NCBI RefSeq assembly: GCF_030144855.1
Contig: NC_082707.1
Coordinates: 30,752,001 to 30,816,000 of the forward strand
Direction: 5' to 3'
Length of the DNA stretch: 64,000 nucleotides
Origin: Hypanus sabinus
Lineage: Eukaryota
The notes under the pieces are model-generated. The model saw only the letters and a list, made by a program, of their open reading frames with translations. It did not search any database and had not been told where the DNA came from. The translations under genes were made by a program, and so were the position numbers. Shown piece after piece: positions 985 through 64,000 of the stretch; positions within the stretch are counted from its first letter, which is position 1, and the number at the start of each line of letters is the position of its first letter.

Positions 985-1650
985 GCTAAAGTGACCAATA
1001 GACTTTGATTTTTGTAGCTCAGTGTCTAGTTGATACTCATTTCATCAATACGACGAGCTACAGTTATTACTCAAAGGAAATGATTTTAAAATACTGTAGG
1101 TATTATTAACCTTTCACCAATTGTATGAGATTTTCCACAATTTGCTATCATTTTGGAAATGTTATAAGAAGCAATGAGACCACTATCAGGTCATTTTTAG
1201 CTTTCTTGGCAAATCACTCGAGTATGCAACGCTTTTCAAATGCTCCTTTCATCTTCTGGAACTGAGCAATACCATAAGTAGCCTTTTCAGGGTGTCTATT
1301 ACGGAAGTGTTCCTGCCATCTTGTTGGTTTCATGGCTTCATTAGACAGTACCGTATTACAAATAAGACACATGGGGCGTCGCTGATCTGACGGGAATGGA
1401 ATAAAACCACACTCCAGGTATGTGAACAACAACACACACAAAATGCTGGTGGAACACAGCAGGCCAGGCAGCCTGACAGCGCTTCTCCCGATAGATGCTG
1501 CCTGGCCTGCTGTGTTCCACCAGCATTTTGTGTGTGAATTTCCAGCATCTGCAGATTTCCTTGTGTTTGCTCCAGGTATGTGACATTGTATTGACCACTT
1601 TCTGTTTCTAAGCAGGATTAGAATTCAAGGCTTCACCACTTTTAGGCTCA
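985..1650 (-). mobile_element. hAT/Buster (Charlie-type) transposase remnant
   Basis: QYNVTYLECGFIPF..PMCLICNTVLSNEAMKP (BED-finger region), GLIASYNIS..GKSHTIGERLIIP, PLSNNTVARRIDEM; stops and deletions. Possible terminal repeat CAGGGGTGTTTCAA (minus) at 4208-4195. Confidence 0.85.
1426..1569. mobile_element. Short palindromic Penelope-tail insertion with 14-bp TSD
   Basis: TSD CTCCAGGTATGTGA at 1412-1425 and 1570-1583; perfect 40-bp inverted arms at 1433-1472 and 1497-1536; same sequence family as the Penelope tail at 20330-20420. Confidence 0.85.
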
Positions 1651-15512: not shown

Positions 15513-16780
15513 CTATAAGACATAGGAGCAGAATTAGGCTATTCACCCCTTCAAGTCTGCTCTGTCATTCCATCATGGCTGATTTATTATCCATCTCAGC
15601 TGCATTCTCTTGCCTTCTCCCCATAACTTTTGATGTCCTGGATAATTAAGAACCCATCAACCTCCACTTTGAATACAATACTCAAATGACTTGGCCTCCA
15701 TAATCGTCTATGGTGAATTTCACAAATTCACAACTCTCTGGCTAAATAAATTCCTCTTAACTCTGTTCTAAATGATCATCCCTCTATTCTGAACTGTCTC
15801 CTCTAGTCCTAGACTTTCTCACTACAGGAAACATACTCTCCAGATCCACTCTATCTAGGACTTCTAATACTCACTAGGTTTCAGTGAGGTTCCCCCGCAT
15901 TCTTCTGAACTCCAGTGCGTTCAGGCCCAGAGCCATCAAGTGCTCCTAATACATTAACACTTTCATTCCCAGAATCATTCCAGTTAACTGCCCCGGGCCC
16001 TCTCCAATGACAGCACGTTTTTTTTAAGATAAGGAGCCCAAAACTGCTCCCAATACTCAAAATGGTGTCTGACCAATGCCTTATAAAGCCTCAGCGTTAC
16101 ATTAGAACATCTGAAAGATTTTTGACAGCAGGCCATTTGACCCAACACAAAGCTTGCCAAAGTCCTATCACGTAGTGTGTTGAAACAACTATCGAATTTA
16201 GATTTGAAAGTCTCCAAGTTACTACTCTCAACTACACAACTAGGTAGTTTGTTCCATGTGTCCACAACTTGCTGAGTAAAGAACTGCTTCCTGATGTTAG
16301 TCTGAAATCTCCACTTATGCTCCTGTATCCTCGTTGACGGATTAATTTTGAAGTAGTAGCTGGCATCCACCTTGCTTATACCCTTAATAATTTTGAACAC
16401 TTTTATCATGTGTCCTCTCGTTCTACGTCTACTTGGGATAAAAAGATTTAATTATTTCAACCTTTCTTCACAGCTCATGCCCTGCATACCTGGAATGAGT
16501 CTCGGCACCCTTCTCTGAACTCTCTCCAGTGCCTTCACATCCCTCACAAAATATGGAAATCAAAATAATACACAGTATTCAAGGTGTGGCCTCACAAGCA
16601 CATCCTACAGCTTAAGGAGAATGTCTAGACTTGAACTCGACGGAGCGCATTATATAGCGTTCTGTTAGCCTTCCGATTTGCTTCCGGTCATTGTCAAGGT
16701 GTTGATAGTGATGAATCTACCAGGGCACCCAAATGATTCTCATGCAGTGCACTTGTATGCTTGTATCTAATATTTCTACT
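15513..16780 (-). mobile_element. Two abutting CR1 3' fragments (junction near 16103)
   Basis: LYKALVRHHFEYWEQFWAP and IKVFKIIKG...VVDTWNKLP; two separate 3' tails. Confidence 0.8.
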
Positions 16781-16784
16781 TCGG

Positions 16785-17110
16785 GTAGATGGAGTTCGTC
16801 AGCCTGGGAAGGCAGTCCATCTGAGAGAGGGAAAACTCAGATTTCAAACCTTCGCTGCCTTGCGGCCATAACCACTCATGGGAAAGGCTTCAGGAGTAAA
16901 CCCTGAGGACAAATCCGGAGCTGGAGTCCCTAAGGCAGTCCGACGTTGCCTTCAACCTCGTTCTGTCAACTCCTGCGACGACACTGGTGCCAAGCTGTAT
17001 GGGCCCTTGCCCTTCCCTTGAACAACATCGGTGGCATGGAGAGGGGAGACTTGCTGATGGTCTTCCATACAACCTTGCCCAGGCTTGTATCCTGGAAACC
17101 ATTCCAGGCG
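16785..17110 (+). mobile_element. RTE-derived non-autonomous element / 5'UTR (AviRTE/BovB-like)
   Basis: GGAAGGCAGTCCATCT..GGAAAACTCAGATTTCAAACC..GCTGCCTTGCGG..GGGAAAGGCTTC resembles recalled RTE 5' ends. Confidence 0.55.
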
Positions 17111-17229
17111 CAGAATCGGGTATATATCACTTGCATACTGTCGTGAAATGTGTTGTTTTTCGTGCATTGCATGGATTAGGATATTAAGAAGGGATTTTAG
17201 GAAGATTTCCTTTTCATCTGGAGGAGGTG

Positions 17230-17489
17230 GTTTGAACCGGCTATTGAAACAACCACTTTAGCTCATTGGGATAAAGACAACCCGCGGACGGGGAATCAGA
17301 ATCTGACGGCCCACGAAAGCCCGGACATCTCCGACCGAGACACCGCACGGAACCGGAAATACGCGCCGGGGATTGAGCCTGTTGGCGGGAGTTTGCCGGT
17401 AACGATCAGTGCCTCTTTATCCCCGTTAAAAGCCCGGGTGCTGGGACTACCTGCCGAACTGATCCATCCCGGGCCGGAGCAGGAGGCAG
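17230..17489 (+). promoter_or_regulatory. RFC4: RFC4 promoter and non-coding exon 1
   Basis: CpG-rich island with ETS CCGGAA (17353-17358) and E2F-type TTGGCGGGA (17382-17390), as expected of a replication gene; donor GCAG|GTTGGT after 17489. Confidence 0.65.
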
Positions 17490-18132
17490 GTTGGTCTATT
17501 GGCCGCCCGTGGTGGGAGAGGCGCAATGTGAATGTCTGGCCTCTGTAATGGGGTCGGGAAGGAGAGTGGGGGGTCACTGGGTTCTCGGGTGGAGTGCATG
17601 CTGTATTTTTTTTGGAGGTGAGGGGGGCAGTTCAGAAGCTGCTCTTGGGAGCCGGTATATACGAGGGTTGGGTGGGGGATGCTTCTCTAGCAGGGGTCGG
17701 ACTTGTACAATACAGTTACTGGAGTCTCGGGTCTGTGAATGGAATTGGGAAATAATGTATGACGTCAAGGGTTAATGGATGCACTCTGGTTGTGGATGTT
17801 GTTGGGGATGTTAATATTTATTATGAAGTTCCTATTGTGCATTTGCAAAAAGTAATGTTTAAAAAGAATCCTGTAATTTATCTTTAAGCCATAATGCGTC
17901 ACCATGCAGTGCCTCAGCATTTATATTTCCAGATGTTTCCTTGACTTGTGATATAGAAACTATCCTAAGAGCAGCAAAATGTGTTCTTTAAGGAACACCT
18001 GACCCTTTCAGGCAGCTGGATTTTCTGGTCACTGCTGATTCACTCTGGTAGAATACTTGACTCAATTTGATGTTTCAAGATTTGTGAGTGCAACATTTGT
18101 CACAGTCATGAAGAAGAGTCTTGGGCTGAAAC

Positions 18133-19285
18133 ATAAGACATAGAAACAGAATTAGGCCATTTGGCCCATTGAGTCTGCTCCACCGTTCAATCATGGCTGA
18201 TGAGGCCCACTTCCCAGCCTTCTCCACATTAACTTTGATGTCATGTCCAATCAAGAACCTATCAAGCTCTGTTTTAAATACACCAAATGACTTGGTCTCC
18301 ACAGCTGTCTGTGGTAATACATTCCACAAATTCACCACCCTCTGGCTAATGAAATTTCTCTGCATCTGTTTTAAATGGATGTCCCTCATTCCTGAGGCTG
18401 TGCCCTCTTGTCTTAGATTCCCCCACCATAGGAAACATCCTTTCCACATTCAAAAGGTTTAAATGAGATCTGACCTCATCCTTCTAAATTCCAGTGAGTT
18501 CAGACCCAGAGCCATCAAAAGTTTCTCATATGATAACTCTTTCTTTCCCGGAATCATCCTTGTGAACCTCCTCTGGACCCTCTCCAATGCCAGCACATCT
18601 TTTTTAAGATGAGGAGCCCAGAACTGTTCACAATACTCAAGGTGAGGCCTCACCAGTGCCTTATAAAGCCTCAGCATCACATTACTCATCTTGTATTCAA
18701 GCCCTCTTGAAATGAATGCTAACATGGCATTTGCCTTCCTTACCACCCACTCTACCTGCGTTGACCTTCAGGGTGTTCTGCACAAGGGCTCCCAAGTCCC
18801 TGTGCATCTCAGACATTTCGGTTTTCTCCCCATTTAGAAAATAGTCTGCATATTTATTTCTACTACCAAAGTGCATGACCATGCATGTTGCATCATTGTA
18901 TTTCATTTGCCACTTTCTTGCCCATTTCCTAATGTCTTAAGTCCTTCAGCAGCCTACCTATTTCCTCAACAGTACCTGCCCCTCCACCAATCCTCATATC
19001 ATCTGCAAACTTGGCAACAAAGCCATCTATTCCATCATCTAAATCATTTTTATACAGTATAAAAAGGGGTATTTCCAAAACCAACCCCTGCGGGATACCA
19101 CTTGTCGTTGGCAGCCAACCAGATAAGGATCCTTTTATTCCCACTTGCTGCTTCCTACCACTCAGCCATTGCTTTAACCATGTTAGTAACTTTCCTGTAA
19201 TACCACGGGCTCTTAACTTGGTAAGCAGCCTCATAGGCCTCCTGAAAATCCAAAATATTCAACATCCATCACATCCCCTTTACCT
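18133..19285 (-). mobile_element. CR1 fragment, RFC4 intron 1
   Basis: Fragmented RT ORFs ([20 protein letters not shown]). Confidence 0.9.
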
Positions 19286-19294
19286 ATCAATATC

Positions 19295-20420
19295 TACCCC
19301 ATTTGTTTGAAGAAAGTGGGAGGAGCCAAAGGAAAAATTATTTAGAGGATAAGTTCTGCTAGGCGGAGGAGAGTGGTGGTGCAGGGGAACTGGTTAGGCC
19401 TGTTGTAGCTATGGGCACTCAGATGGGTCCCAGGTATGTCTACCTGTTTGTCAACTAACTGGAACAGTCTATTTTCCAAGCCTACACCGGTGGCTGTTCT
19501 GCACTTTTCCTGTGCTACATCGACGACTGTATTGGTGCTGCTTCCTGCACCCATGATGAACTCTTCGATTTCATCCACTCTGCCTGCAACTTCCACCCTG
19601 CCCTCAAATTCAGCTGGTCCATTTTTGACACCTCCCTTTCCTTTCTCAATCTCACTGTCTATACCTCCTGAGAGAGCTTATCTGCTGATATCTGTTACAA
19701 ACCCACGGATTATCACAGCTAACTGAACTACTCCTCATCCCACCCTGCTGCTTGTAAAAACGCCATCCCCTTCTCTCAATTACTCTATCTCAGCTGCATC
19801 TTCTCTCAGGATGAGGCTTTTCATTCTAGAACGAAGGAGATGTACTCCCCGTGTGGCCTCCTGTATATCGGTGAGACCCAACATAGATTGGGAGACCACC
19901 TTGCCGAGTATCTACGCTCCATCTGCCAGGACAAGCGGGATCTGCCAGTGGCCACCCATTTTAATTCCACATCCCATTCCCATTCTGATATGTCCATCCA
20001 TGGCCTCCTCCACTGTAGTGATGAGGCCACAGTTGGGTTGGCGGAACAACACCTTGTATTCCATTTGGGTAGCCTCCAACCTGATGGCATGAACATCCAT
20101 TTCTGAAACTTCTGGTAATGCCTCCCACCGTTTCCCATCTCCTTTTCCCTCTCTCACCTGATCTCCTTGCCTGCCCATCACCTCCCTCTGGTGCTCCTCC
20201 CTGCCCCCCCCCCCTTTTTCTTTCTTCCATGGCCATACCCTCCTCTCGCCTTTTAAACGTACTGCTCATCTTTCTTTTTCTCCAGTCCTGCCGAAGGGTT
20301 TCAGCCCGAAATGTTGACTAATTTTTTCTATAGATGCTGCCTGACCTGCTGAGTTCCTCCAGCATTTTGTATATGTTGCTTTGGATTTCCAGCATCTACC
20401 GATTTTCTCTTGTTTGTGTG
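19295..20420 (+). mobile_element. Penelope-like element: RT and GIY-YIG remnants, inverted 5' piece, terminal repeat with hammerhead motif
   Basis: VAMGTQMGP; YIDD at 19516-19527; YKPTD; GLLYIGET..RLGDH..PVATHFN..QPDGMN (19840-20106); tail 20283-20420. Confidence 0.9.
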
Positions 20421-21049: not shown

Positions 21050-21168
21050 ATGCAAGCCTTTTTAAAAGGAGCTGGTGTGATCGGCACTAAACCTACAAGA
21101 GAGAAAAGCGCAGCAGGAACCAGTGGCGAAAACAAGAAGCAAAAATCCGTGCCATGGGTGGAAAAATA
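21050..21168 (+). CDS. RFC4: RFC4 exon 2 (start codon)
   Basis: MQAFLKG...VPWVEK; acceptor ends 21042, donor TA|GTAAG. Confidence 0.95.
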
Positions 21169-24100: not shown

Positions 24101-27100
24101 TCAATGGATCTGGGGTTGAGAGGGTGAACAGCTTTAAGTTCCTTGGCATACACATCACCAAGAATCTCACGTGGTCTCTACAGACGGTTAAAGAAGTTTG
24201 GTGTGGGGCCCCCAAATCCTAAGAACTTTTTATAGGGGCACAATTGAGAGCATCCTGACTGGCTGCATCACTGCCTGGTATGGGAACTGTACTTCCCTCG
24301 ATTGCAGGATTGTCAGAGTGGTGCGGACAGCCCAGCACATCTGTAGATGTGAACTTCCCACTATTCGGGGCATTTACTGAGATGTGTAAAAACTGCCCGA
24401 GCAATCACTAGGGACCAGACTCACCGCAACCACAAACTGTTCCTGCTGATACCATCCAGTACTGCAGCATAAAAGCCAGGACCAACAGGTTCCAGAACAG
24501 CTTCTTCCACCAGGCCGTCAGACTGATTAATGCTGATACAGTTGTTATATTGACAGTGCATACTATTTATTATAAATTGCACATTTAGATGGAGACATAA
24601 CGCAAAGAGTTTTACTCCTTGCATATGAAGGAAGTAAGTAATAAAATCACTTCAATTCAATAACTCTGCTGTACCTGTGAAACACCTCCCTTCCTGTCCC
24701 CCTACTCCCTTATATAAATGAAAAGTGCAAAGGTTCATTTATTATCAGAGTTTACAACTCTGGAAATTCTTTAATTCACCAGGTAGCCATGAAAACAAGA
24801 AAGAAAAAGAAAGGCAGCATGATTCCCACAAAAAAAACAAACGGCACATTAACCCCCAAATCCCTCCTCTTCCTCCCACACAAAAAAAAAGCGAACAAAG
24901 CTTGTATTTGAGCTACGTGCTAGTCTCCTGCAGAGGTCACTTGAATAAGAGATGACAGCCTTCAGTACATACTGTTTTAATCCTCATTGCATCAAGACAG
25001 GTGCAGTTTATATATGAAACAAAGAATAATATATTGGAAACACTTGGCAGTTCAATGGCATCTGTGGAAAGGGAAATAGTTAATATTTTGGGTCTGCTAC
25101 ATCTTTCCATCATCCCTCTCAACCCCATTCTCCTCTCCCTGACGCGCTGAATAATCAAGAACTTGAAAGGATGTCTGGGGCTCTGGGTAGTGGAGGGGAA
25201 GAAGTAATGGATCAAGTGTTGCATCTGCCGTGTTTGGGAAGGTGCCATAAGGGAGAAAGCAGACCAGGCAGTCAAAAAGGTAGAGGTGCTTCTGAAATGC
25301 AGGAGGGAAGTGGGAAGCGGAAAGTGTGTTTGATGGAATCTTGTTGAAAATGGGAAGGACGATCAGTTGACTGTTGGCCATATCCCATAGCCCCACTATT
25401 GGCAGCACACAACGCAAACGAGCAAATTCACCATCCAACTGAGCCATTGACCTACTTGACCTGGCCCTTCCTTGTCACAAGTATTCTTTTGTCCCTCCAT
25501 CAAATGCAACTTAAAGCTGGCCTTCTCAGTTTTGGGGAAAGGCCTTCTAATTGTTACTCTATCTGCATATACTGCCTGACCTGCTAAAGTGTTTCCAGCA
25601 TGTTGTTTTTGGTTTCAGATCTGCAATGTTTGCATTTCTCCCTTTATGCGGTGGGGTATTCAGTGAGTATGTGTATGTACTACAGTTGCCCTCTAAAGTT
25701 TGTCTTGCTAACTTTTGTCGTCATCATACAGTCGGCCAAAATGTGTGGCTGAAGTTGCGTTTCAGGAGGAAGTTGTGTCTGTGCTAAAGAAGTCTCTGGA
25801 AGGAGCAGATGTGAGTGGCATTTATAGTTTCAGCTATAGAAGTTGTATTCATTTATATTTCAACACCTTGGTAAATGGGAGAATTAAACCATCTAAGTGA
25901 CTGTTAATGTTTTTAGTTGCATCAGCTCGTCAAATTTATGGGAGATTTTAATTTCCCTGGTATTGACTGGACCATCCAGAATTTTAAGAGCGTGCACAGA
26001 GTGGAATTTGTGGAGTGTGTCCTGTGTCAATATACTGTATATAGAGGAGCCTGCTAGGCAGAGCGTGACACTGCACTTCCCCCTGGGGAATGGGATAGGG
26101 TAAGTGGCTGAATTGATCGGTGGCAAGAACTTTGGGTCCAGTAATTCTGCTCTGAGTAATTTAGCGCTGTATGAAAAGCAGTTCACAATTCCCAGGCCAC
26201 TTGGGGGGATGCCCGTTTGTGTAAAAGTGAGACAGATCCTTGCGAGTGTTTAACCAAAAAGTATGTAATAAGTTCTAAGTGGGCTTAGAGCTGAAAACAC
26301 ATCTAAGGTAAAAAGATAACATGATACAAAGGTAGCTAGCCAATCTGAAAATACATCTATTTGCAATTGCCTGTTACAGCTTCCCAACCTGCTTTTTTAT
26401 GGGCCCCCTGGGACAGGGAAAACTTCCACGATATTGGCTGCAGCAAGAGAACTCTTCGGGTAAGGTAACTTGCATCTTGTCAACCAGAAAGTGCCGGAAA
26501 TGCTCAGTAAGCCAAGCAAAATCAGTAGGGAAAGAAACACTTATTGTTTTGAGTTGATGTCCTTCCGTCGTAACTGGAAAAAGCTGGAAATAAGCTTTGA
26601 GGTGCAGAGAAAGGGGGAAGGGGGAGAGAAAAAGTGCCATGTTAGGCTAAAATTAAGATTTAAGATGTATGGGATCCTTGGTGACTTGGCCACTTAGATT
26701 CAAGACTAGCTTGCCCATGGAAGACAGGGTAGTGTTCTGGTTTCACTCTATTAGTGGTCCAGTCCTCATTAAGGGATCGGCGGTGGAGAAGATCAGGAAA
26801 CTCCTAGGTGTTATTGTATCAGAGGATCTGTCCTGGGACCATCACAAAGAAGGCACAACAGCGTCTCTACTTTCTTAGACATTTGCATAGATTCGGTATG
26901 TCATGAAAAGCTTTAACATGCTTATAGATATACTGTGGAGAGTATCCCAACTGGTCGCATCATGGCCTGGTATAGAAACCCCGAAGGCCAGGGATGGAAA
27001 AGGCTACAGAAAGTTGTGGCCCAGTCCGTCATGGGCAAAGCCCACCCCACCATTGAGCATGTTTACAAGGAGTGCTGCCACAAGAAAGCAGCATCCATCA

Positions 27101-30100: not shown

Positions 30101-33100
30101 CTTCCATATATGGAATCATCTCCAAATATAATCTGTCATCTTTCATAATCTTAGAGTCTTCCTATCACATTGTTCTTTAGCCTAAAGGAAGGATTCTCAG
30201 CTTCTTCAGTCTTTTCTGACCTACCCTATCGTAGCAAATCTTGTTTGCATCCTATCCGGATGCATCACGGCCTGGTATGGCAACTGAAGGCTTGTGTCTG
30301 CAAGCCAACATCACCACCTCTCACACATGCTTCTCGCTGTCTCAGGAAGGCAGTTGACATAATTGAGGACTTCACCCACCCCAGTCATTCTCTCCTCCTC
30401 CTTCCCCCCCCCCACCAGAAGATGCAAAAGCCTGAAAGCAAGTTACCACCAGGCTCAAGAACAGTTTCTACCCCATTGTTTTAAGACTAGTGAAATAAGA
30501 TGGTCCCTCAACCTCACAATGTACCTTGCAATGGCCTGTCAGCACTGTTCTTTCTCTCTAACTAGCACATCATTCTGTTCTCTGTTCATTGTTTTAATTT
30601 ATACTACTTCACTGCACTCTTCTAATGAACTGATTGATGTGAAAGGTGTGCAAGATCAGCGTTTGACTGTACTTGGTAGGTGTGACAATAATAAACCAAT
30701 TATTAGTACTTCAACATCCCTATTATAATATGAGACCCTACATAACTAAATGAAGAAACTTACTCCATCCCCTCTTTGATTTCTCTGTCTTTTTTTTCCA
30801 ATTAAAGATGTTTCTCTACATGGTTTGCGAATCTCTACTGTTCAGATTATTTTGACCTCTATTTTATATTGACTCCTTTTCTTTCCCCGAATGTTTCTGT
30901 GGACTACCCATTCCCTTACTAAACATTTTGCAATTAAATGTCACAGTGTCTTCTGTATTGTTGCATTAATGTCTTGTGTTGCACTCTGCAGAGGTGCTAA
31001 TTACAGCTGAAGTTGCCATTTGTAATGGAAATGATTAATTAGCTTCTAATTATTATAAACTCAGTGGAGGAAAGAAAGTTAAATAAACTCATTCATCAAA
31101 ACACACTTATCCTCGTAGTTTCACAGCTCTGTAAATGGTTCCTCTTACGAATCTGACTCTTACCGCAAGTGTTCCCAGCTTGAATGTTTTTAATCATTCC
31201 TGTCATGCCTTTTCTTCCAGTGGGAAACCTGCTCCTCCATTTAAGATAATCATCTTGGATGAAGCTGACTCCATGACAAGCGCTGCACAGGCTGCCCTTC
31301 GACGCACAATGGAAAGGGAGTCAAAAACCACACGGTTTTGTCTCATCTGCAACTACATCAGCAGGTAGGAGAGCCATAACTAAAGAAATGTTTCCTTGAA
31401 GGGATGGCAGGCAGAGTAACGTACTTTTTACTAAACAGACTTTAATTGCCTGTCAATAAAGTCTAGAACTATAGTATGGAGTTATTCTGAACTCAAACAT
31501 TTAGTTCTGAAAGCAGAGAATTTATTTTCCTTTCATAATCAATATGTAATAAAGGTTCATTGTCCCTTATCGGAAATGCTTGGGGCTGGAAGTGTTTCAG
31601 ATTTTGGAGTATGTAATGAAATAACTAGGAATCACAATCTTTTCTGGTTCCAAATTTATATGCTACCGGTAATTAGTCCTTGTCTTGCACTTCATCACAA
31701 ATATGTACTTGACAGTAAAAATCATTACATACCTTAAGTATGACTTGTGCAAGGTAACAAAGGCAGCAGAGTGGCTTCGGGGAAATGCCTGAATCGGCTA
31801 TTGAGAAACAACAAACAATGGCAGGCTTTCAGTCTCCACCTCTGATACAGAGTTTTGATTAAAAGGTTATAGAGCACAGTATTTGTATTTTACCTTGTTT
31901 TTATAAGGGGTACTCAACCTATACAAATGTTGAATTACTCTGAGATGATTCTTGCTACTTAATGGAAAACCCTAATGTTGGATGAGTAGATAGATTGGGT
32001 GTTGTCATTTATAACACCTTCCGATTGCAGGAGACTTGTAACTGCCCATTTCCATTCACTAGTTTCTAGCAGACTAGTAAGATGATATTGAAACAGTTCT
32101 CAAGGGAGTCTAGAAGAATATTGTGGTCAATTGTGTTGAAAGCAGCACTTAGATATAGAAGAACTGGAACTGAGACTCGTTCGGTATTAGTGTGAAGCCT
32201 AAGGTTGCTGATCTTGGTAAGGGCTCTGTTCCATGCTGGGATTTGCCCTAAAACCCGACTGAAACTTTTTGTAGAACATTGTCCTCATTCAGAAAGATGT
32301 TGAGTTGGTTCAGAATTAGTTTCTCAGGAATCTTGCCCTGGAAGAGAAAATTTGATTATAGGCCTGTAGTTGGCCTATACCTTGCTATCAAGATTTGGCT
32401 TTTTAAGTAGAGGGTTGACAGCCACAGTTTTGAAAATGTCTGGGAAAACTTCATTTTCAAGGGATGCGTTAAGAATTGAATTGAGTTGACTTTATTATTT
32501 ACATCCTTCATATACAGGAGTAAAAATCTTGACATCTTCGTTCAAATGTGCAATTATAGTAATTTATAATAAATATTATGTACAACAAGATAGTCAATAT
32601 GACATAAATACGGGTACATCAGCATGAACTAAGCAGTCTGTTGTCCTGGTGGAAAAAACTGTCCCTGAACCTGTTGGTCCTGGCTTTTATACTGCGGTAC
32701 TGTTTCCCGGATGATAGCAGCTAGTACAGTGTGTGGTTGGAGTGACTCGGGTCTCCAATGATCTTTCAGGCTCTTTTTACACACTTCTCTTTGTAAATGT
32801 CCTGAATAGTGGGAAGTTCACAGCTGCAGATGTGCTGGGCTGTCCGCGCCACTCTCTGCAGAGTCCTGCAATTGAGGGAAGTTCAGTTCCCATGCCAGGC
32901 AGTGATGCAGCCAGTCAATTGTGCCCATGTAGAAAGCTCTTAGAACCTGGGGGGCCATATTAAAGTTCTTCAACCATCTGAGGTGAAAGAGGCGCTGTTG
33001 TGCCTTTCTCACCACACAGCCGGTATGTACAGACCACATGAGATCCTCGGTGATGTTTATGCCGGGGATCGTAAAGCTGTTCACCCTCTCAACCCCAGAT

Positions 33101-36100
33101 CCATTGGTGTCTATAGGGATTAGCCTATTTGCATTCCTCCTATAGTCCACTACCAACTCATTTGTTTTTACGACATTGAGGGAGAGGTTGTTTGCTTGAC
33201 ACCACTGTGTCAGGGTGATGACTTCCTCTCTGTAGGCTGTCTCATTATTATTTGAGATTAGGCCAATCAGTGTAGTGTCATCAGCAAATTTTATTAGCAG
33301 ATTGGAACTGTTGGTGGCAACACAGTCATGGGTAGACAGAAAGTAAAAGAGGGGGCTTAGTACACAGCCCTGAGGGGCACCTGTGTTGAGGGTCAGAGGG
33401 GCAGAGGTGAGGGAGCCCATTCTTACCACCTGTCAGACCTCCCGGCGATCTGACAGGAAGTCCAGGATCCAGCTACACAAGGCAGGGTGAAGGCCGAGGT
33501 CTCTGAGCTTCTTGTCAAGCCTAGAGGGAATTGTGGTGTTGAATGCTGAACTGTAGTCCAAGAACAGCATTCTTACATAAGCATTCCTAACTTAATAGTG
33601 TTTTCAATTCTGAGTCCTTAAAAGGTGTGGTATGGACAGGGTCAAGACAGCAGGTAAACTGTTTACACTTTGTTACAATTTCTTGTGGAGTTTTGATTCA
33701 GGAATACTTGTAAATTTTGATAGTTTAACTGTCTTTTTACAAGGTTGGCTGTAGAGTTTACTTGTACTGTAGTCATACTGAACCTAATGGAACAACATTT
33801 GCAAATTCCTTACATTTTGTGACAGATGTTTGACTGAGGATGTTGTAGGTTATGGCAGGGTTCAATAGTTGGTTTATAGTTAAGAATATTCTTGAATCGT
33901 CGCTATTCTTTGTAATAATCTTGCTAAATGGTCTCTTAAAGGAGGCTAGTTTTTTTTTGGAATATATTATGGTGGACTTCTAGTCCAGTTTTCAACCACT
34001 TTCTTTCAGCTGCTCTGCGTAATCTCTTGAGTTCACAGACAGAATTGTTTAACCACGGTGAAGTTTTTCTAAGTGCTTTCTTGTTCACCCTAAATGGTGC
34101 CACTGTGTTTAATATATTTATCAACTTATTCTAGAAAGAATCAACCATTTCATTTACTGAGCAATTTATCTCACATGGGTCAGATAAATGAGGCAGCTCA
34201 GACAATTTAGGTTGTGTTGTAGCATCAAGAAATTATTAACTAATTTACTTCATGGTCTTGGTTCCAGGCAGAGAATGTCAAAAAGTACACAAAATGATAG
34301 ATATAGTGGTATCTTACAGAGAGACGTTAATAACCTTAACCCTTTTGTCATTACTAAATCAAGTGTACTTCCAAGTGTGCTCAGTGGCACGATTGGCAAG
34401 ATCTAGGCTATCTAGTAAGCTCATGACTTCAGTTGCCATAAAGTTTGCATTTGAGAGATCATTAATATGAATCTTTAAATCACCAGGGATGGGAATCCTG
34501 TTGTAGTTCAATATAATAAAGGATAAAGCAGGCATTGGATTTGGGAGGACAATAAATGACAATGCAAAGGACAGGATCTGTACCACACCACAAATTTTGA
34601 ATGTATACCTACAAAAATGCCTTGAAAATATCCTTAATATTACTTGTAGTATTTATTAAGTCCTCCTGGTTCCCTGATTAAATTCTTTCCTGCTTATTTA
34701 ATATTTCACAAGGGACATGTCCAATTTTAACTTTGTAATCATTATATAGGCTTTTTTTTACATTTGTGACTAAATTTGCAACATTTCCTGTCATCCCCAA
34801 TAACTGCACTCAAAGTTACTCATCCCATCTGCTGCCTAAAATTGTTATAATCAGCCTTCCAGTACGCCAACCACCGCCCCCACCCCCCACCAACCCATTT
34901 AAAACTTTCACTGGAAGTTCCATCATATCCTCATCATTCTATATTCAAGTTCTCAGAAAAGTAATTCTCAAATGCTGTGATAGTCTCTACTTTCATTGCC
35001 CAGATTATTGAGTGTTTCAGACTCTTGACTATCATCTGATGGGAAAAAAAATCTACCGAGCCTTTGTGGATCCCATTTACCTTAATATTCTGGATCAGCC
35101 TACCATGAGGAATTTTCCATGTGGACAATATCTGTTGCCCTATTGTCATCAATCATCTTCATCACTTAAACTCAATCAAGTTTATAAGGTGTGACCTCTG
35201 CTGCACAAAGCTATGCTGTCTTTTATATTTTAATTCAATGCAAATCATGAATCATCAACACATGGTTTCATTTATCTATAACTCAATTGAAACTCAGTGA
35301 CTTTTCTCCTGTGTTTTAGGATAATTGAACCATTGACGTCACGTTGTTCCAAATTCCGGTTTAAGCCTTTGACAGACAGTATACAAGAAAAGAGGCTGCG
35401 TGACATCTGTGAGAAGGAGAATGTCAAATGCAGCAATGAAGTAAGTTTTATACAATCTGGAATTGTATGATACATTTCAAACGCAACTTTTGGTTTGGAA
35501 GCCAATGTGATTGTAACTTTGTTATGTTAGAGGTGAGGGTTGTAATGCTAGCTTTACTACAGCAAATAACTATTTCAAGATCTGTTTTATTACTTCCTTT
35601 TTGGGATTAAATTGTGCAGGTTAAAAATTCCTGTTGGAAGAAATCTATAAACATGATCTGCAAATGCAGTGAAACTGCATTTGAAACAGGGGGTGCTACA
35701 TTGGCTTGCCTAGATTGTGTGATTGTATTGAATGTAAATTTGAGTTGGCAAATATTTTCAATTTGCTGTTGTGATTTTGTTTTAGACAATCAATATGCTC
35801 ATCAATGTATCAGAAGGTGACTTGAGGAAAGCAATAACTTACCTTCAATGTGCAACAAGACTTACTGGAGGAAAAGACATTACTGAGCAAGTCATCATTG
35901 AAATTTCTGGAGTAAGAAAACTTTTTCTCATCTATAAGATAGAGGTGGATCTGCAGGAAACTATATTGTAAAGCATTTCTTCAGAGGGCCATCTTGTCAT
36001 AGTGATATTACTCTTTGATGTACTCAGATTTTCTGTCAATCAGCTCATTCCATTGATAGCTAAGAATTTTTTTGAGTGGTTTTTCTGTTGAAGTTCTCTT

Positions 36101-42791: not shown

Positions 42792-54235
<11,444 letters not shown>

Positions 54236-54802: not shown

Positions 54803-54965
54803 TAACACACACAAATTACTAGCGTAACTGATGCAGGTCAGGCAGCATCTATAGAAATTAATTAACAGTCGACGTTGTGGGATGAGACCTTTCTTGAGTC
54901 CTGCATTTTGTGTGTGTTTGTGTGTTACTTTGAATTTCCAGCATTTTATAGGTTTTCTGGTGTTT
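54803..54965. mobile_element. Inverted Penelope-tail element with degenerate hammerhead motif
   Basis: Minus arm 54803-54900 (GGTCTCATCCCACAACGTCGACT) abutting a plus arm GCATTTTGTGTGTG..GAATTTCCAGCA. Confidence 0.7.
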
Positions 54966-58708: not shown

Positions 58709-58805
58709 ACTCCTGGTGAAGGGTCTTGGCCCGAAACATCGACTATCCCCCTCCATAAATGCTGCCTCACCTGCCGAGCACTTCCAGCACATGTGTGTGC
58801 TACTC
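58709..58805 (+). mobile_element. Penelope-tail repeat with hammerhead motif
   Basis: CTGGTGA-AGGGTCTTGGCCC-GAAACATC-GACT followed by ATGCTGCCTCACCTGCCGAG arm. Confidence 0.75.
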
Positions 58806-62825: not shown

Positions 62826-62925
62826 CACACACAAAATGCTGGTGGAACACAGCAGGCCAGGCAGCATCTATAGGAGAAGCACTGTCGACGTTTTGGGCCG
62901 AGACCCTTCGTCCCTCCGTCAGGGC
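62826..62925 (-). mobile_element. Penelope-tail repeat with hammerhead motif
   Basis: Minus strand GACGAAGGGTCTCGGCCCAAAACGTCGAC; its 40-bp arm is identical to the 1433-1472 arm. Confidence 0.8.
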
Positions 62926-64000
62926 TAATATCACTTAGGAAGCAAATGGCCAAGTCTTTTTACAAACTATACAAGAAATATTTAGAATATTTTGATAAAC
63001 CAGGAATGGATTGGAAGTCTCTCCTATTCTAGAGAATATGAATAAAATTTGGCAGATTAAGTTGCAACTTCATGTTTTACAATACATAAAGGACTCCAGT
63101 CTCCAAAGCTGAGTGAATGCTGAAGTTAGAGTTCATGCACTTTTCTCTTGTGTTTCCACAGTCAGGATTATGGTTCACATTAACAAAATCAAAGTTCAAG
63201 TTTGAAGGCAACATTAACAGCCAATGCACAGCAATTTCATTGTGAACCTGGCACATTTGACTTCATAATGTCTGTTGTGGTGAAAGGGTGTTACTTCGTT
63301 TAAGATCTTAATCTATTGACATGACTAAAGCTGTTAGTAGTAAGGGTAACTGAGAGCTGTACTGTTGTAATAAACTGCTGCTGGATCTACACCAGCCATA
63401 TGCTTCCCAACACTTCTTGAGTGAGGGTGATTCCATCCAGACTGAACAAGGGGTTTGAGGGATGTGCCAAACACCAGTTAGTGTGAAAAGTAGCTTTTAA
63501 GTCCTACTTGGAACAAAGATATAAAAATATGAAATTAAATCAGAATATTGCTTTAGAAAACTCGTCGTCACAGACTCAAATCCAAGGAATAACAATAAGA
63601 ACCAGTGATTCTCTCATGGCTCATACCTGTCGAACCAATCATGAGAGAAGTATCTGATAGTTATAAGAACTGCTTTTGACTGTCACCCAGGATACCTGCA
63701 TAAATAACTTACAGGTATGTGCAACAAACAAGGAAGAGTTGCTCTGCCTCTGAAATGTTTGTGTCTGGGCTGTGCTTTCTTTGCATGTTGTAATTCCCCT
63801 TGTAATACGGATAAGTGAGGCCAAGAATTCAGCTCACAGAGAGTGTATTGGCATTCACTGTTGCTGGGCAACAATTATTGTTTTAACAGATTAATAAAGT
63901 AAAAGCCAAATGAACAGAAGGATAAAAATTATTTTATCATCATAGGATTTGTTGTTTCACCTTCTGTAGTAACTTTGAACTATGCAATCTGAGCAATGGA

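What the first reader, a model, noticed from the sequence alone, without database searches (positions are those of the whole stretch)
20283..20319. Dispersed family of minimal hammerhead ribozyme motifs carried by Penelope tails
Seen: five related motifs at 20283-20319 (+, attached to the Penelope RT/GIY-YIG remnant), 58709-58744 (+), 62884-62923 (-), 54867-54900 (-) and 18104-18134 (+). Their consensus is AGTC-CTGACGA-AGGGTCTCGGCCC-GAAACGTC^GACT. This gives stem I AGTC/GACT, core CUGANGA, stem II GGG/CCC, GAAA and a GUC cleavage triplet, with stem III reduced to the palindrome ACGT. Established: Penelope-like elements carry minimal type I hammerheads that can cleave as dimers. Each copy here has a different core lesion (CTGCCGA, CTGGTGA, AAAAC, ATGAAGA). 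Inference: an intact ribozyme ancestor gave rise to an abundant non-autonomous ribozyme-bearing repeat in this genome. Two copies are sense-oriented inside RFC4 intron 1.
Basis: partly seen in the sequence, partly recalled or inferred. Interest (0 to 1): 0.8.

Follow-up and report, generated by a model that had tools for sequence, protein, structure and literature searches.

The report
Penelope retrotransposon tails with hammerhead motif
The five motifs are real but decayed copies of the 3' end of a very abundant Penelope-like retrotransposon, which carries the minimal hammerhead ribozyme motif already known from such elements, so this is an ordinary case of a known kind.

Summary

- **Copy numbers in this 4.04-Gb genome.** The helix II to cleavage-site 23-mer occurs 28,617 times. 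A fully intact 28-nt motif (CUGANGA, one extra nucleotide, GGGUYUCRGCCC, GAAA, CGUH) occurs 13,821 times.
- **Position in the element.** The motif lies about 270 nt after the stop codon of an ORF with reverse transcriptase (RT), a CX4CX2C linker and a GIY-YIG endonuclease, and 55-125 nt before the element's end. Copies show Penelope-like element (PLE) hallmarks: graded 5' truncation, head-to-head inverted partial copies and an optional 3' extension.
- **Match to the known motif.** Its sequence features fit the minimal PLE hammerhead of Cervera and de la Peña 2014 (PMC4209133); cleavage itself could not be tested.

- CTGCCGA at 20288 is a subfamily trait, not a private lesion. It was seen in 28/28 sampled relatives and in 2,021 exact 16-mers.
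- The short copies are truncated PLE insertions, not a separate non-autonomous family.
- I found no stem covariation in the hammerhead helices.
- Copy 5' ends are not enriched at the cleavage site.
- Rfam does not detect the motif.
- The RNA data were contigs only and showed nothing about cleavage.

Verdict: a new member of a known kind, of low interest. The A6C subfamily adds to published hints that cleavage is dispensable for PLE spread.

The parts
19294..19402 (-). Inverted partial copy of the PLE RT region, joined head-to-head to the 5' end of the forward copy.
   Evidence: blastn against long copies L044 and L052: 78-82% identity, reverse orientation, adjoining the point where the forward copy starts.
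19404..20201 (+). 5'-truncated PLE coding remnant. It holds the C-terminal part of the RT, an internal deletion of about 470 nt at 19843, and a GIY-YIG endonuclease remnant at 19840-20106.
   Evidence: blastn to L044/L052. The ORF reads CGLLYIGETQHRLGD. Better copies give Pfam GIY-YIG at E=5e-4 and RVT_1 at E=9.5e-4.
20284..20319 (+). Hammerhead-like motif of the older subfamily B. Helix I is AGTC/GACT, the core box is CTGCCGA (A6 to C), there is an extra A, helix II is GGGTTTCAGCCC, then GAAA and TGTT (decayed from CGTC).
20320..20417 (+). 3' tail of the element: a linker, the conserved block GATGCTGCC...CAGCATTTTGT (ATG at 20334), and the optional 3' extension TTTCCAGCATCT...
   Evidence: The block is 95% identical between subfamilies.
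58709..58799 (+). Short truncated copy. The motif at 58709-58744 has CTGGTGA and ACAT, followed by the short-form tail.
62826..62926 (-). Copy of the young subfamily A. It has a 7-nt duplication inside the core box (CTGACGGAGGGACGAAGGG) and G12 changed to A (AAAA), followed by the short-form tail.
   Evidence: 92% identity to L044/L052.
54810..54903 (-). Strongly decayed copy (CTCAAGA, ACAA) with its tail.
54900..54964 (+). Inverted tail fragment joined head-to-head to the copy at 54810-54903.
18104..18131 (+). 5' part of a motif (AGTC-ATGAAGA-A-GAGTCTTGGGCT-GAAACAT), cut off where a minus-strand LINE ends.
   Evidence: LINE homology covers window 18129-18200. The LINE RT lies at 18929-19234(-), RVT_1 E=4e-5.
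1412..1583 (+). Mini-insertion of the same family without a ribozyme core. The forward tail runs from GACAGCGC (the first bases after the cleavage site) to the 3' end. It is preceded by a 40-nt perfect inverted copy of the tail block and flanked by a 14-bp target-site duplication.

Best explanation
**What the motifs are.** They are decayed copies of the 3'-terminal module of a very abundant EN+ Penelope-like retrotransposon. The CX4CX2C linker suggests the Neptune type. They were laid down by target-primed reverse transcription, which leaves 5'-truncated copies that often carry an inverted partial copy at the 5' end.

**What the module holds.** It carries the minimal type I hammerhead motif that PLEs have in their terminal repeats. 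Helix I has 3-5 bp. The core is CUGANGA followed by one unpaired A. Helix II is 4 bp, closed by G10.1-C11.1. Then come GAAA and ACGU in place of helix III.

**How it probably works (inferred).** In source elements two such motifs would pair through ACGU to build helix III and cut after GUC. This would happen weakly and probably with help from the element's protein, trimming read-through or tandem transcripts.

**Is cutting needed?** Probably not for spread. One subfamily of a few thousand copies amplified with A6 changed to C, and the youngest and largest subfamily has only 3 bp in helix I. The adjoining tail block is more conserved than the hammerhead, and I take it to be the RT recognition and initiation signal.

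**Window copies.** None of the five has an intact core, so none should cleave.

**My odds.** PLE-tail hammerhead motif: 0.9. The motif is catalytic in vivo in source elements: about 0.5. Cleavage is needed for transposition: about 0.2.
For: **Abundance and intact copies**
- The 23-mer occurs 28,617 times against 0 for the reversed control.
- 32,526 copies keep AGTC, the extra A and helix II. Of the first 100 listed, 65 have CUGANGA.
- 13,821 copies keep the whole 28-nt motif.

**PLE context**
- Long copies carry an ORF with an RT piece (YIDD), a CX4CX2C linker and GIY-YIG upstream of the motif.
- The RT piece has 40,621 first-look candidates in the genome.
- The nearest Atlas clusters carry RVT_1, GIY-YIG and HTH_animal, with a score of 0.98.

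**PLE hallmarks**
- A 5'-truncation series.
- Head-to-head inverted copies.
- An optional 3' extension of about 45 nt.
- These are the hallmarks described in PMC8557442.

**Motif features named in PMC4209133**

**Conservation between subfamilies**
- The hammerhead is 84% identical and the tail block 95%, against 53-57% in the flanks.

**Evidence that cleavage is dispensable**
- A6C occurs in 28 of 28 subfamily B copies and in 2,021 exact 16-mers.
- Published work on the Anolis PLE found that ribozyme mutants still insert in vitro (PMC11167929).
Against: - No Rfam hammerhead model matches even an intact copy at E up to 10.
- Pfam hits to RVT_1 and GIY-YIG lie below the curated cut-offs.
- There is no compensatory change in helix I or II between subfamilies.
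- Folding energy is no better than for shuffled sequence, with z between 0 and -1.2. The monomer's predicted best fold pairs core GACG with CGUC, which is an inactive fold.
- Copy 5' ends are not enriched at the cleavage site: 108 there against 62 and 117 at control boundaries.
- I retrieved no full-length element with an upstream repeat, so the two-repeat arrangement is not shown here.
- Cleavage itself is untested.
Confidence: 0.85

Rival explanations
1. The hammerhead-shaped block is kept as a structural or protein-binding part of the 3' module that the PLE reverse transcriptase recognises. Catalysis would be irrelevant or vestigial in this family.
For: - A subfamily amplified with A6 changed to C.
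- The largest subfamily has only 3 bp in helix I.
- 5' ends are not enriched at the cleavage site.
- The neighbouring tail block is even more conserved, and it shows one U-A to A-U swap in a small hairpin.
- The Anolis PLE ribozyme needs the protein and is dispensable for insertion in vitro (PMC11167929).
- Naiad PLEs thrive without hammerheads (PMC8557442).
Against: - The dominant subfamily keeps every catalytic core base.
- The variation between variants falls at the free positions: N7, loop 2 and H17.
- Within the N7-G8 CpG, the harmless TG form is about three times as frequent as the inactivating CA form in the listed sample. That fits selection on G8 in source elements, but a founder effect would also explain it.
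Confidence: 0.3
2. The short copies form a distinct non-autonomous family (retrozyme- or SINE-like) that carries the ribozyme and is mobilised in trans by PLEs. This is what the first reader inferred.
For: - Most copies are short.
- Retrozymes derived from PLE repeats are described in vertebrates, including one cartilaginous fish (bioRxiv 10.64898/2026.07.22.740005).
- A 74-nt tandem array of tail sequence exists on contig C77.
Against: - Copy lengths form a continuum running into the ORF.
- No shared 5' boundary or head sequence was seen.
- Neighbouring motifs were in opposite orientation, head-to-head, not in tandem.
- The C77 array lacks the ribozyme core.
Confidence: 0.1
3. The resemblance to a hammerhead arose by chance in an ordinary repeat.
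For: - Rfam finds nothing.
- The folding z-scores are not significant.
Against: - A minimal-hammerhead descriptor gave 18 hits, all from this family, in 336 kb. It gave 0 in five shuffles.
- Every feature of the published PLE motif is present, and at the expected place in a PLE.
Confidence: 0.02

Closest known systems
Minimal hammerhead motifs of metazoan Penelope-like elements (Cervera and de la Peña 2014, PMC4209133)
   Same: - Type I topology with CUGANGA and GAAA boxes.
- One unpaired nucleotide between A9 and G10.1, and a G10.1-C11.1 pair.
- Helix III replaced by a palindrome, so only a dimer can form it.
- A short helix I.
- Located in the terminal repeat of an RT/GIY-YIG element.
- Thousands of dispersed, mostly solitary or oppositely oriented copies.
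   Different: - Helix II has 4 bp with a 4-nt loop, not the 6-8 bp described for Schistosoma and Drosophila.
- Sequence heterogeneity is low: one family with a few variants in my sample. The paper stresses many consensus families full of covariations.
- One subfamily has a mutated A6.
Poseidon element PAc of Anolis carolinensis and its hammerhead (PMC11167929)
   Same: - A PLE with a hammerhead in the repeat and a 3' tail signature where reverse transcription starts.
- The published finding that cleavage is not needed for insertion fits the A6C subfamily here.
- No evidence for cut ends in the RNA data.
   Different: - In PAc the ORF begins at stem II and the cut site lies 26 bp after the start codon.
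- Here the motif lies about 270 nt after the stop codon, and an ATG follows the cut site by about 19 nt. Whether that ATG starts the ORF of full-length copies is not shown.
Animal non-LTR retrozymes (PMC7229834; bioRxiv 10.64898/2026.07.22.740005)
   Same: Type I hammerheads related to PLE repeats. Both are abundant in non-mammalian, non-avian vertebrates.
   Different: Retrozymes are tandem repeats of ribozyme-bearing units that give circular RNAs. Here copies are dispersed, 5'-truncated or head-to-head, and no tandem array of complete units was seen.

Membership tests
PLE minimal hammerhead (min-HHR) | Catalytic boxes CUGANGA and GAAA, with a U-H cleavage dinucleotide | tested here: met
   Met for the family: 13,821 copies match CTGANGANGGGTYTCRGCCCGAAACGTH. 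Not met by any of the five window copies, which read CTGCCGA, CTGGTGA, a disrupted box plus AAAA, CTCAAGA plus ACAA, and ATGAAGA.
PLE minimal hammerhead (min-HHR) | [quoted passage not shown] | tested here: met
   An A is present in all 51 aligned copies.
PLE minimal hammerhead (min-HHR) | G10.1-C11.1 pair closing helix II | tested here: met
   G-C in 16/16 subfamily A copies. In subfamily B, 21/28 are G-C and 6 are G-T.
PLE minimal hammerhead (min-HHR) | Palindromic 15.2-16.2 (helix III possible only in a dimer) | tested here: met
   ACGU in the common sequence. It decays through its CpG to AUGU or ACAU in older copies.
PLE minimal hammerhead (min-HHR) | Helices supported by compensatory changes among families | tested here: not met
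   Helix II is identical in both subfamilies. Helix I differs by non-compensatory changes: A-U to A.A and C-G to U.G. Only two subfamilies of one family were sampled.
PLE minimal hammerhead (min-HHR) | Located in the terminal repeat of a PLE | tested here: met
   The motif lies about 270 nt after the stop of the RT/GIY-YIG ORF and 55-125 nt before the element's end. A second, upstream repeat in a full-length copy was not retrieved.
PLE minimal hammerhead (min-HHR) | Self-cleavage after H17 (as a dimer, or with protein help) | not testable with these tools
   Only contigs of RNA libraries were available. They span the site and cannot show RNA ends.
Rfam hammerhead families | Match to a curated covariance model | tested here: not met
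   No hammerhead hit at gathering score, or at E up to 10, on window copies or on an intact copy. The models expect a helix III hairpin, which this motif lacks.
EN+ Penelope-like element | Single ORF with an RT followed by a C-terminal GIY-YIG endonuclease | tested here: met
   - L052 holds a 472-aa open frame ending in GIY-YIG (E=3.5e-3). L044 gives GIY-YIG at E=5e-4. L051 gives RVT_1 at E=9.5e-4. All three are below the curated cut-offs.
- An RT piece with YIDD lies upstream in the same orientation.
- Atlas neighbours carry RVT_1, GIY-YIG and HTH_animal.
EN+ Penelope-like element | Insertion structure: 5' truncation, inverted 5' partial copy, optional 30-40 bp tail extension | tested here: met
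   compared with the description in PMC8557442.
Neptune clade of PLEs | CX2-5CxxC motif in the linker before the endonuclease | tested here: met
   L044 reads YPCKQNKCYTCPY just upstream of the GIY-YIG. No phylogeny was made, so the clade assignment is tentative.
Non-LTR retrozyme | Tandem repeats of ribozyme-bearing units | tested here: not met
   Among the first 100 places listed in each, neighbouring motifs were head-to-head, never in tandem. The 74-nt array on C77 lacks the core. This is a sample, not a genome-wide census.

The most novel reading that the evidence does not exclude
In this genome the hammerhead motif of PLEs is kept mainly as part of the reverse transcriptase's 3' recognition module, not as a working ribozyme. 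The natural A6C subfamily of a few thousand copies, and the lack of copies starting at the cut site, would then be a fossil record showing that self-cleavage is dispensable for PLE amplification in vivo.
Probability: 0.3. Interest if true: 0.5.

Novelty: new member of a known kind. Interest (0 to 1): 0.25.

Why it matters
Hammerheads in PLE repeats have been known since 2014, so the main point adds only another family, in a large genome that looks like a cartilaginous fish's (not identified here).

What is still open is what these ribozymes do. Published in vitro work suggests that cleavage is weak, depends on protein and is not needed for insertion. This genome offers a natural comparison. 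A young subfamily has an intact core but a 3-bp helix I. An older subfamily of a few thousand copies spread with a mutated A6. Natural copies of both could be tested side by side.

For annotation, the motif and the tail block are useful markers of PLE 3' ends, which standard Rfam scans miss.

Tried and rejected
- **Rfam.** Scans at gathering score and at E up to 10, on window copies and on an intact copy, gave no hammerhead hit.
- **Pfam.** The window ORFs gave nothing for the PLE part. Better copies gave only sub-threshold RVT_1 and GIY-YIG.
- **Folding.** The energies of the hammerhead and tail segments are not better than shuffled sequence. Cofolding two copies predicts strand-swapped helix II rather than the textbook dimer. 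This did not settle anything.
- **Fossil test for cleavage.** Among copies anchored on the linker (21,909), I counted those whose homology breaks exactly at the cut site and compared them with breaks 3 nt downstream and 4 nt upstream.
  - The counts were 108, 62 and 117, so there is no enrichment.
  - The controls are inflated by palindromic junctions and by a tandem array.
- **RNA evidence.** All 24 runs found are kept as contigs. Three are on record as RNA libraries and hold part of the repeat. Their contigs span the cut site but cannot show ends, strand or transcription. No conclusion either way.
- **Other hammerhead families.** A descriptor scan of the 336 kb I held found only this family. 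A genome-wide scan was not possible.
- **Consensus.** I made no consensus of the coding part of the element. Comparisons used natural copies and per-column counts of the non-coding tail.

Full report
**1. Observation.**

The five motifs are present at the stated places and strands. The flagged copy reads AGTC (20284-20287), CTGCCGA (20288-20294), A, GGGTTTCAGCCC (20296-20307), GAAA, TGTT, GACT (to 20319).

A 16-nt helix II plus GAAA pattern with up to 3 mismatches occurs 4 times in the window. The expectation is 0.40, and none of 100 shuffles reached 4. The sequence that follows the motif, ATAGATGCTGCCTGACCTGCTGAG, occurs 4 times against 0 expected.

The 18104 motif agrees with the family at 24 of 31 positions. 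It stops where the 3' end of a minus-strand LINE begins: LINE homology covers window 18129-18200, and the LINE RT lies at 18929-19234(-). It is therefore a cut remnant.

**2. The family in the genome.**

The window's assembly has 4.04 Gb.
- The 23-mer GGGTCTCGGCCCGAAACGTCGAC, with at most 1 mismatch, occurs 28,617 times. The reversed control gives 0.
- AGTC, 7 free positions, A and GGGTYTCRGCCC together occur 32,526 times. Of the first 100 listed, 65 have CUGANGA in the free positions and 7 have CUGC.
- The complete motif CTGANGANGGGTYTCRGCCCGAAACGTH occurs 13,821 times.

**3. What carries the motif.**

Thirty loci show a shared upstream sequence of varying length, from over 1,500 nt down to a few nt. 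This is a 5'-truncation series.

Long copies have, upstream and in the same orientation, reading-frame pieces with PLE features:
- KIHK...RPIVS and FLRYIDDCIG, which are RT motifs.
- YPCKQNKCYTCPY, a CX4CX2C linker.
- CGLLYIGETRRRLGDRFVKHLRS, a GIY-YIG motif.

Pfam gives GIY-YIG at E=5e-4 and 3.5e-3 and RVT_1 at E=9.5e-4. All are below the curated cut-offs. A 472-aa open frame in L052 runs from the RT region to the end of the endonuclease. The RT piece has 40,621 first-look candidates in the genome. The nearest ESM Atlas clusters carry RVT_1, GIY-YIG and HTH_animal at a score of 0.98.

The stop codon lies about 270 nt before the motif, and the element ends 55-125 nt after the cut site.

About 30% of independent loci have a reverse-complement partial copy joined head-to-head at their 5' end. 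In the genome listings, neighbouring motifs were always minus then plus, never in tandem. About half of the young copies carry an extra 3' extension of about 45 nt, TTGAATTTCCAGCATCTGCAGATTTCCTCGTGTTTG.

High 5' truncation, an inverted 5' copy and an optional short tail are the published structural hallmarks of PLEs (PMC8557442). The CX2-5CxxC linker points to the Neptune type (same paper). I made no tree, so this assignment is tentative.

In the window itself, the forward copy at 19404-20417 has an internal deletion of about 470 nt and an inverted partial copy at 19294-19402. The 144-bp palindrome with a 14-bp target-site duplication at 1412-1583, noted earlier in this scan, is a mini-insertion of the same family. 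It has a tail only and an inverted arm of 40 nt.

**4. Is it the known PLE hammerhead?**

Cervera and de la Peña (PMC4209133) list features that were not part of their search descriptor and that recur in PLE motifs:
- a G10.1-C11.1 pair;
- a palindromic 15.2-16.2;
- a short helix I;
- location in the terminal repeats;
- many solitary or oppositely oriented copies.

All of these are met here. A descriptor with these features gave 18 hits in the 336 kb I held, all from this family. Five shuffles gave none. Rfam's hammerhead models do not see the motif. That is expected, because it has no helix III hairpin.

**5. Subfamilies, and what they say about function.**

Relatives of the flagged copy form an older subfamily B, about 85% identical to it.
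- **Subfamily B.** The core is CUGCCGA in 28 of 28 sampled copies, and the 16-mer AGTCCTGCCGAAGGGT occurs 2,021 times. Loop 2 is UUCA and helix I has 5 bp (CAGUC/GACUG).
- **Subfamily A.** This younger and much larger subfamily has CUGACGA and loop 2 CUCG. Helix I is only GUC/GAC, followed by A.A and U.G.

From general knowledge of hammerhead mutagenesis (recalled, not checked here), A6 is one of the invariant core bases and its replacement strongly lowers cleavage. A subfamily of a few thousand copies thus spread with an impaired core.

Helix II is identical in both subfamilies, and the helix I differences are not compensatory, so I found no covariation for the hammerhead helices.

The segments differ in how well they are conserved between the two subfamilies:

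| Segment | Identity between A and B |
|---|---|
| 3' UTR upstream of the motif | 53% |
| Hammerhead | 84% |
| Linker | 57% |
| Tail block GAUGCUGCC...CAGCAUUUUGUGUG | 95% |
| 3' extension | 84% |

The only two differences in the tail block are a U-A to A-U swap in a small hairpin, CUG-[U/A]G-UUC-C[A/U]-c-CAG. This amounts to one or two events and is only suggestive. I infer that the tail block is the most constrained part. It is likely the site where the RT binds and starts, as shown for the Anolis element (PMC11167929).

**6. Tests for cleavage in vivo.**

If cut RNA were a common template, many copies should begin exactly at GAC. Among 21,909 copies anchored on the linker, about 93 of the first 100 run through the cut site.

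I counted copies whose three preceding bases all differ from the family sequence:
- 108 at the cut site;
- 62 at a boundary 3 nt downstream;
- 117 at a boundary 4 nt upstream.

The controls include palindromic junctions and a tandem array. There is no clear enrichment.

The RNA data gave nothing usable. All 24 runs found are kept as contigs. Contigs in three RNA libraries span the cut site, but they cannot show ends or prove transcription. Folding energies are not better than shuffled sequence, and the monomer's best predicted fold pairs core GACG with CGUC.

These negatives agree with the published absence of reads ending at the PAc cut site, but they do not exclude weak cleavage.

**7. Gene context.**

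RFC4 lies on the + strand. Its ATG exon is at 21050-21166 (MQAFLKG...VPWVEK), with Walker A at 26401, DEAD at 31255 and SRC at 35339. EIF4A2 lies on the - strand between about 42.9 and 53.4 kb, with SNORA81 and SNORD2 in its introns.

The copies at 18104 and 20284 are sense to RFC4 and lie just upstream of the ATG exon, which is preceded by a likely splice acceptor. Whether that places them in intron 1 depends on an untranslated first exon that I could not locate.

**8. Verdict.**

The reading as a PLE-borne minimal hammerhead is right, and the kind has been known since 2014. PLEs occur in all vertebrate lineages (PMC4350176), and PLE-derived ribozyme repeats were recently surveyed in vertebrates, including one cartilaginous fish (bioRxiv 10.64898/2026.07.22.740005).

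The idea of a separate non-autonomous repeat is not supported, and neither is the idea that each copy was damaged independently. The modest added value is the A6C subfamily and the strongly conserved tail block. Both bear on the open question of what PLE hammerheads are for.

Noticed in passing
G000 contig C77, about 35.1-39.8 Mb (not fetched): Tandem arrays with a 74-nt period made of the tail segment that starts 4 nt before the cut site (GTTCGTCGACAGTGCTTCTCCCTATAGATG...). This is a satellite derived from the PLE tail without the ribozyme core.
   Followed up: no
G000 contig C1, 9.3-10.5 Mb (L023-L027): Near-identical copies (98.6-99.9% over 3 kb) of one head-to-head insertion recur every 85-100 kb. 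This points to a large tandem segmental duplication.
   Followed up: partly
window 20332-20368 and all family copies (alignment A1, columns 176-219): The tail block GATGCTGCC...CAGCATTTTGTGTG is 95% identical between subfamilies, against 53-57% in the flanks. Its only two differences are a U-A to A-U swap in a small hairpin. An ATG about 19 nt after the cut site opens a frame (MLPGLLCSTSIL...) that runs to the element's end.
   Followed up: partly
window 1412-1583: A mini-insertion of the same family: two 40-nt perfect inverted arms of the tail block around 24 nt, with a 14-bp target-site duplication CTCCAGGTATGTGA. The forward part starts at GACAGCGC, the first bases after the cut site.
   Followed up: yes
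genome-wide junctions: Head-to-head junctions recur at short microhomologies: the palindrome AGAAGC|GCTTCT, CTTCGTC|GAC and GGCAG|GAC. This suggests template switching at preferred sites during PLE insertion.
   Followed up: no
window 15984-19234 (-): A LINE with an RT remnant (RVT_1 E=4e-5) and a very abundant 3' end (...GGGCCAAATGGCCTAATTCTGTTTCTATGTCTTAT). That 3' end has 2,130 first-look candidates in the genome.
   Followed up: partly
window 46177-46343 (-) and 53137-53207 (-): SNORA81 (90.8 bits) and SNORD2 (70 bits) lie in introns of EIF4A2, which runs on the minus strand convergent with RFC4.
   Followed up: no
runs X1-X24: The 3' module is held at 22-89% of sampled words by runs labelled with eight different coded organisms, so the family seems to be shared by several species.
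   Followed up: no
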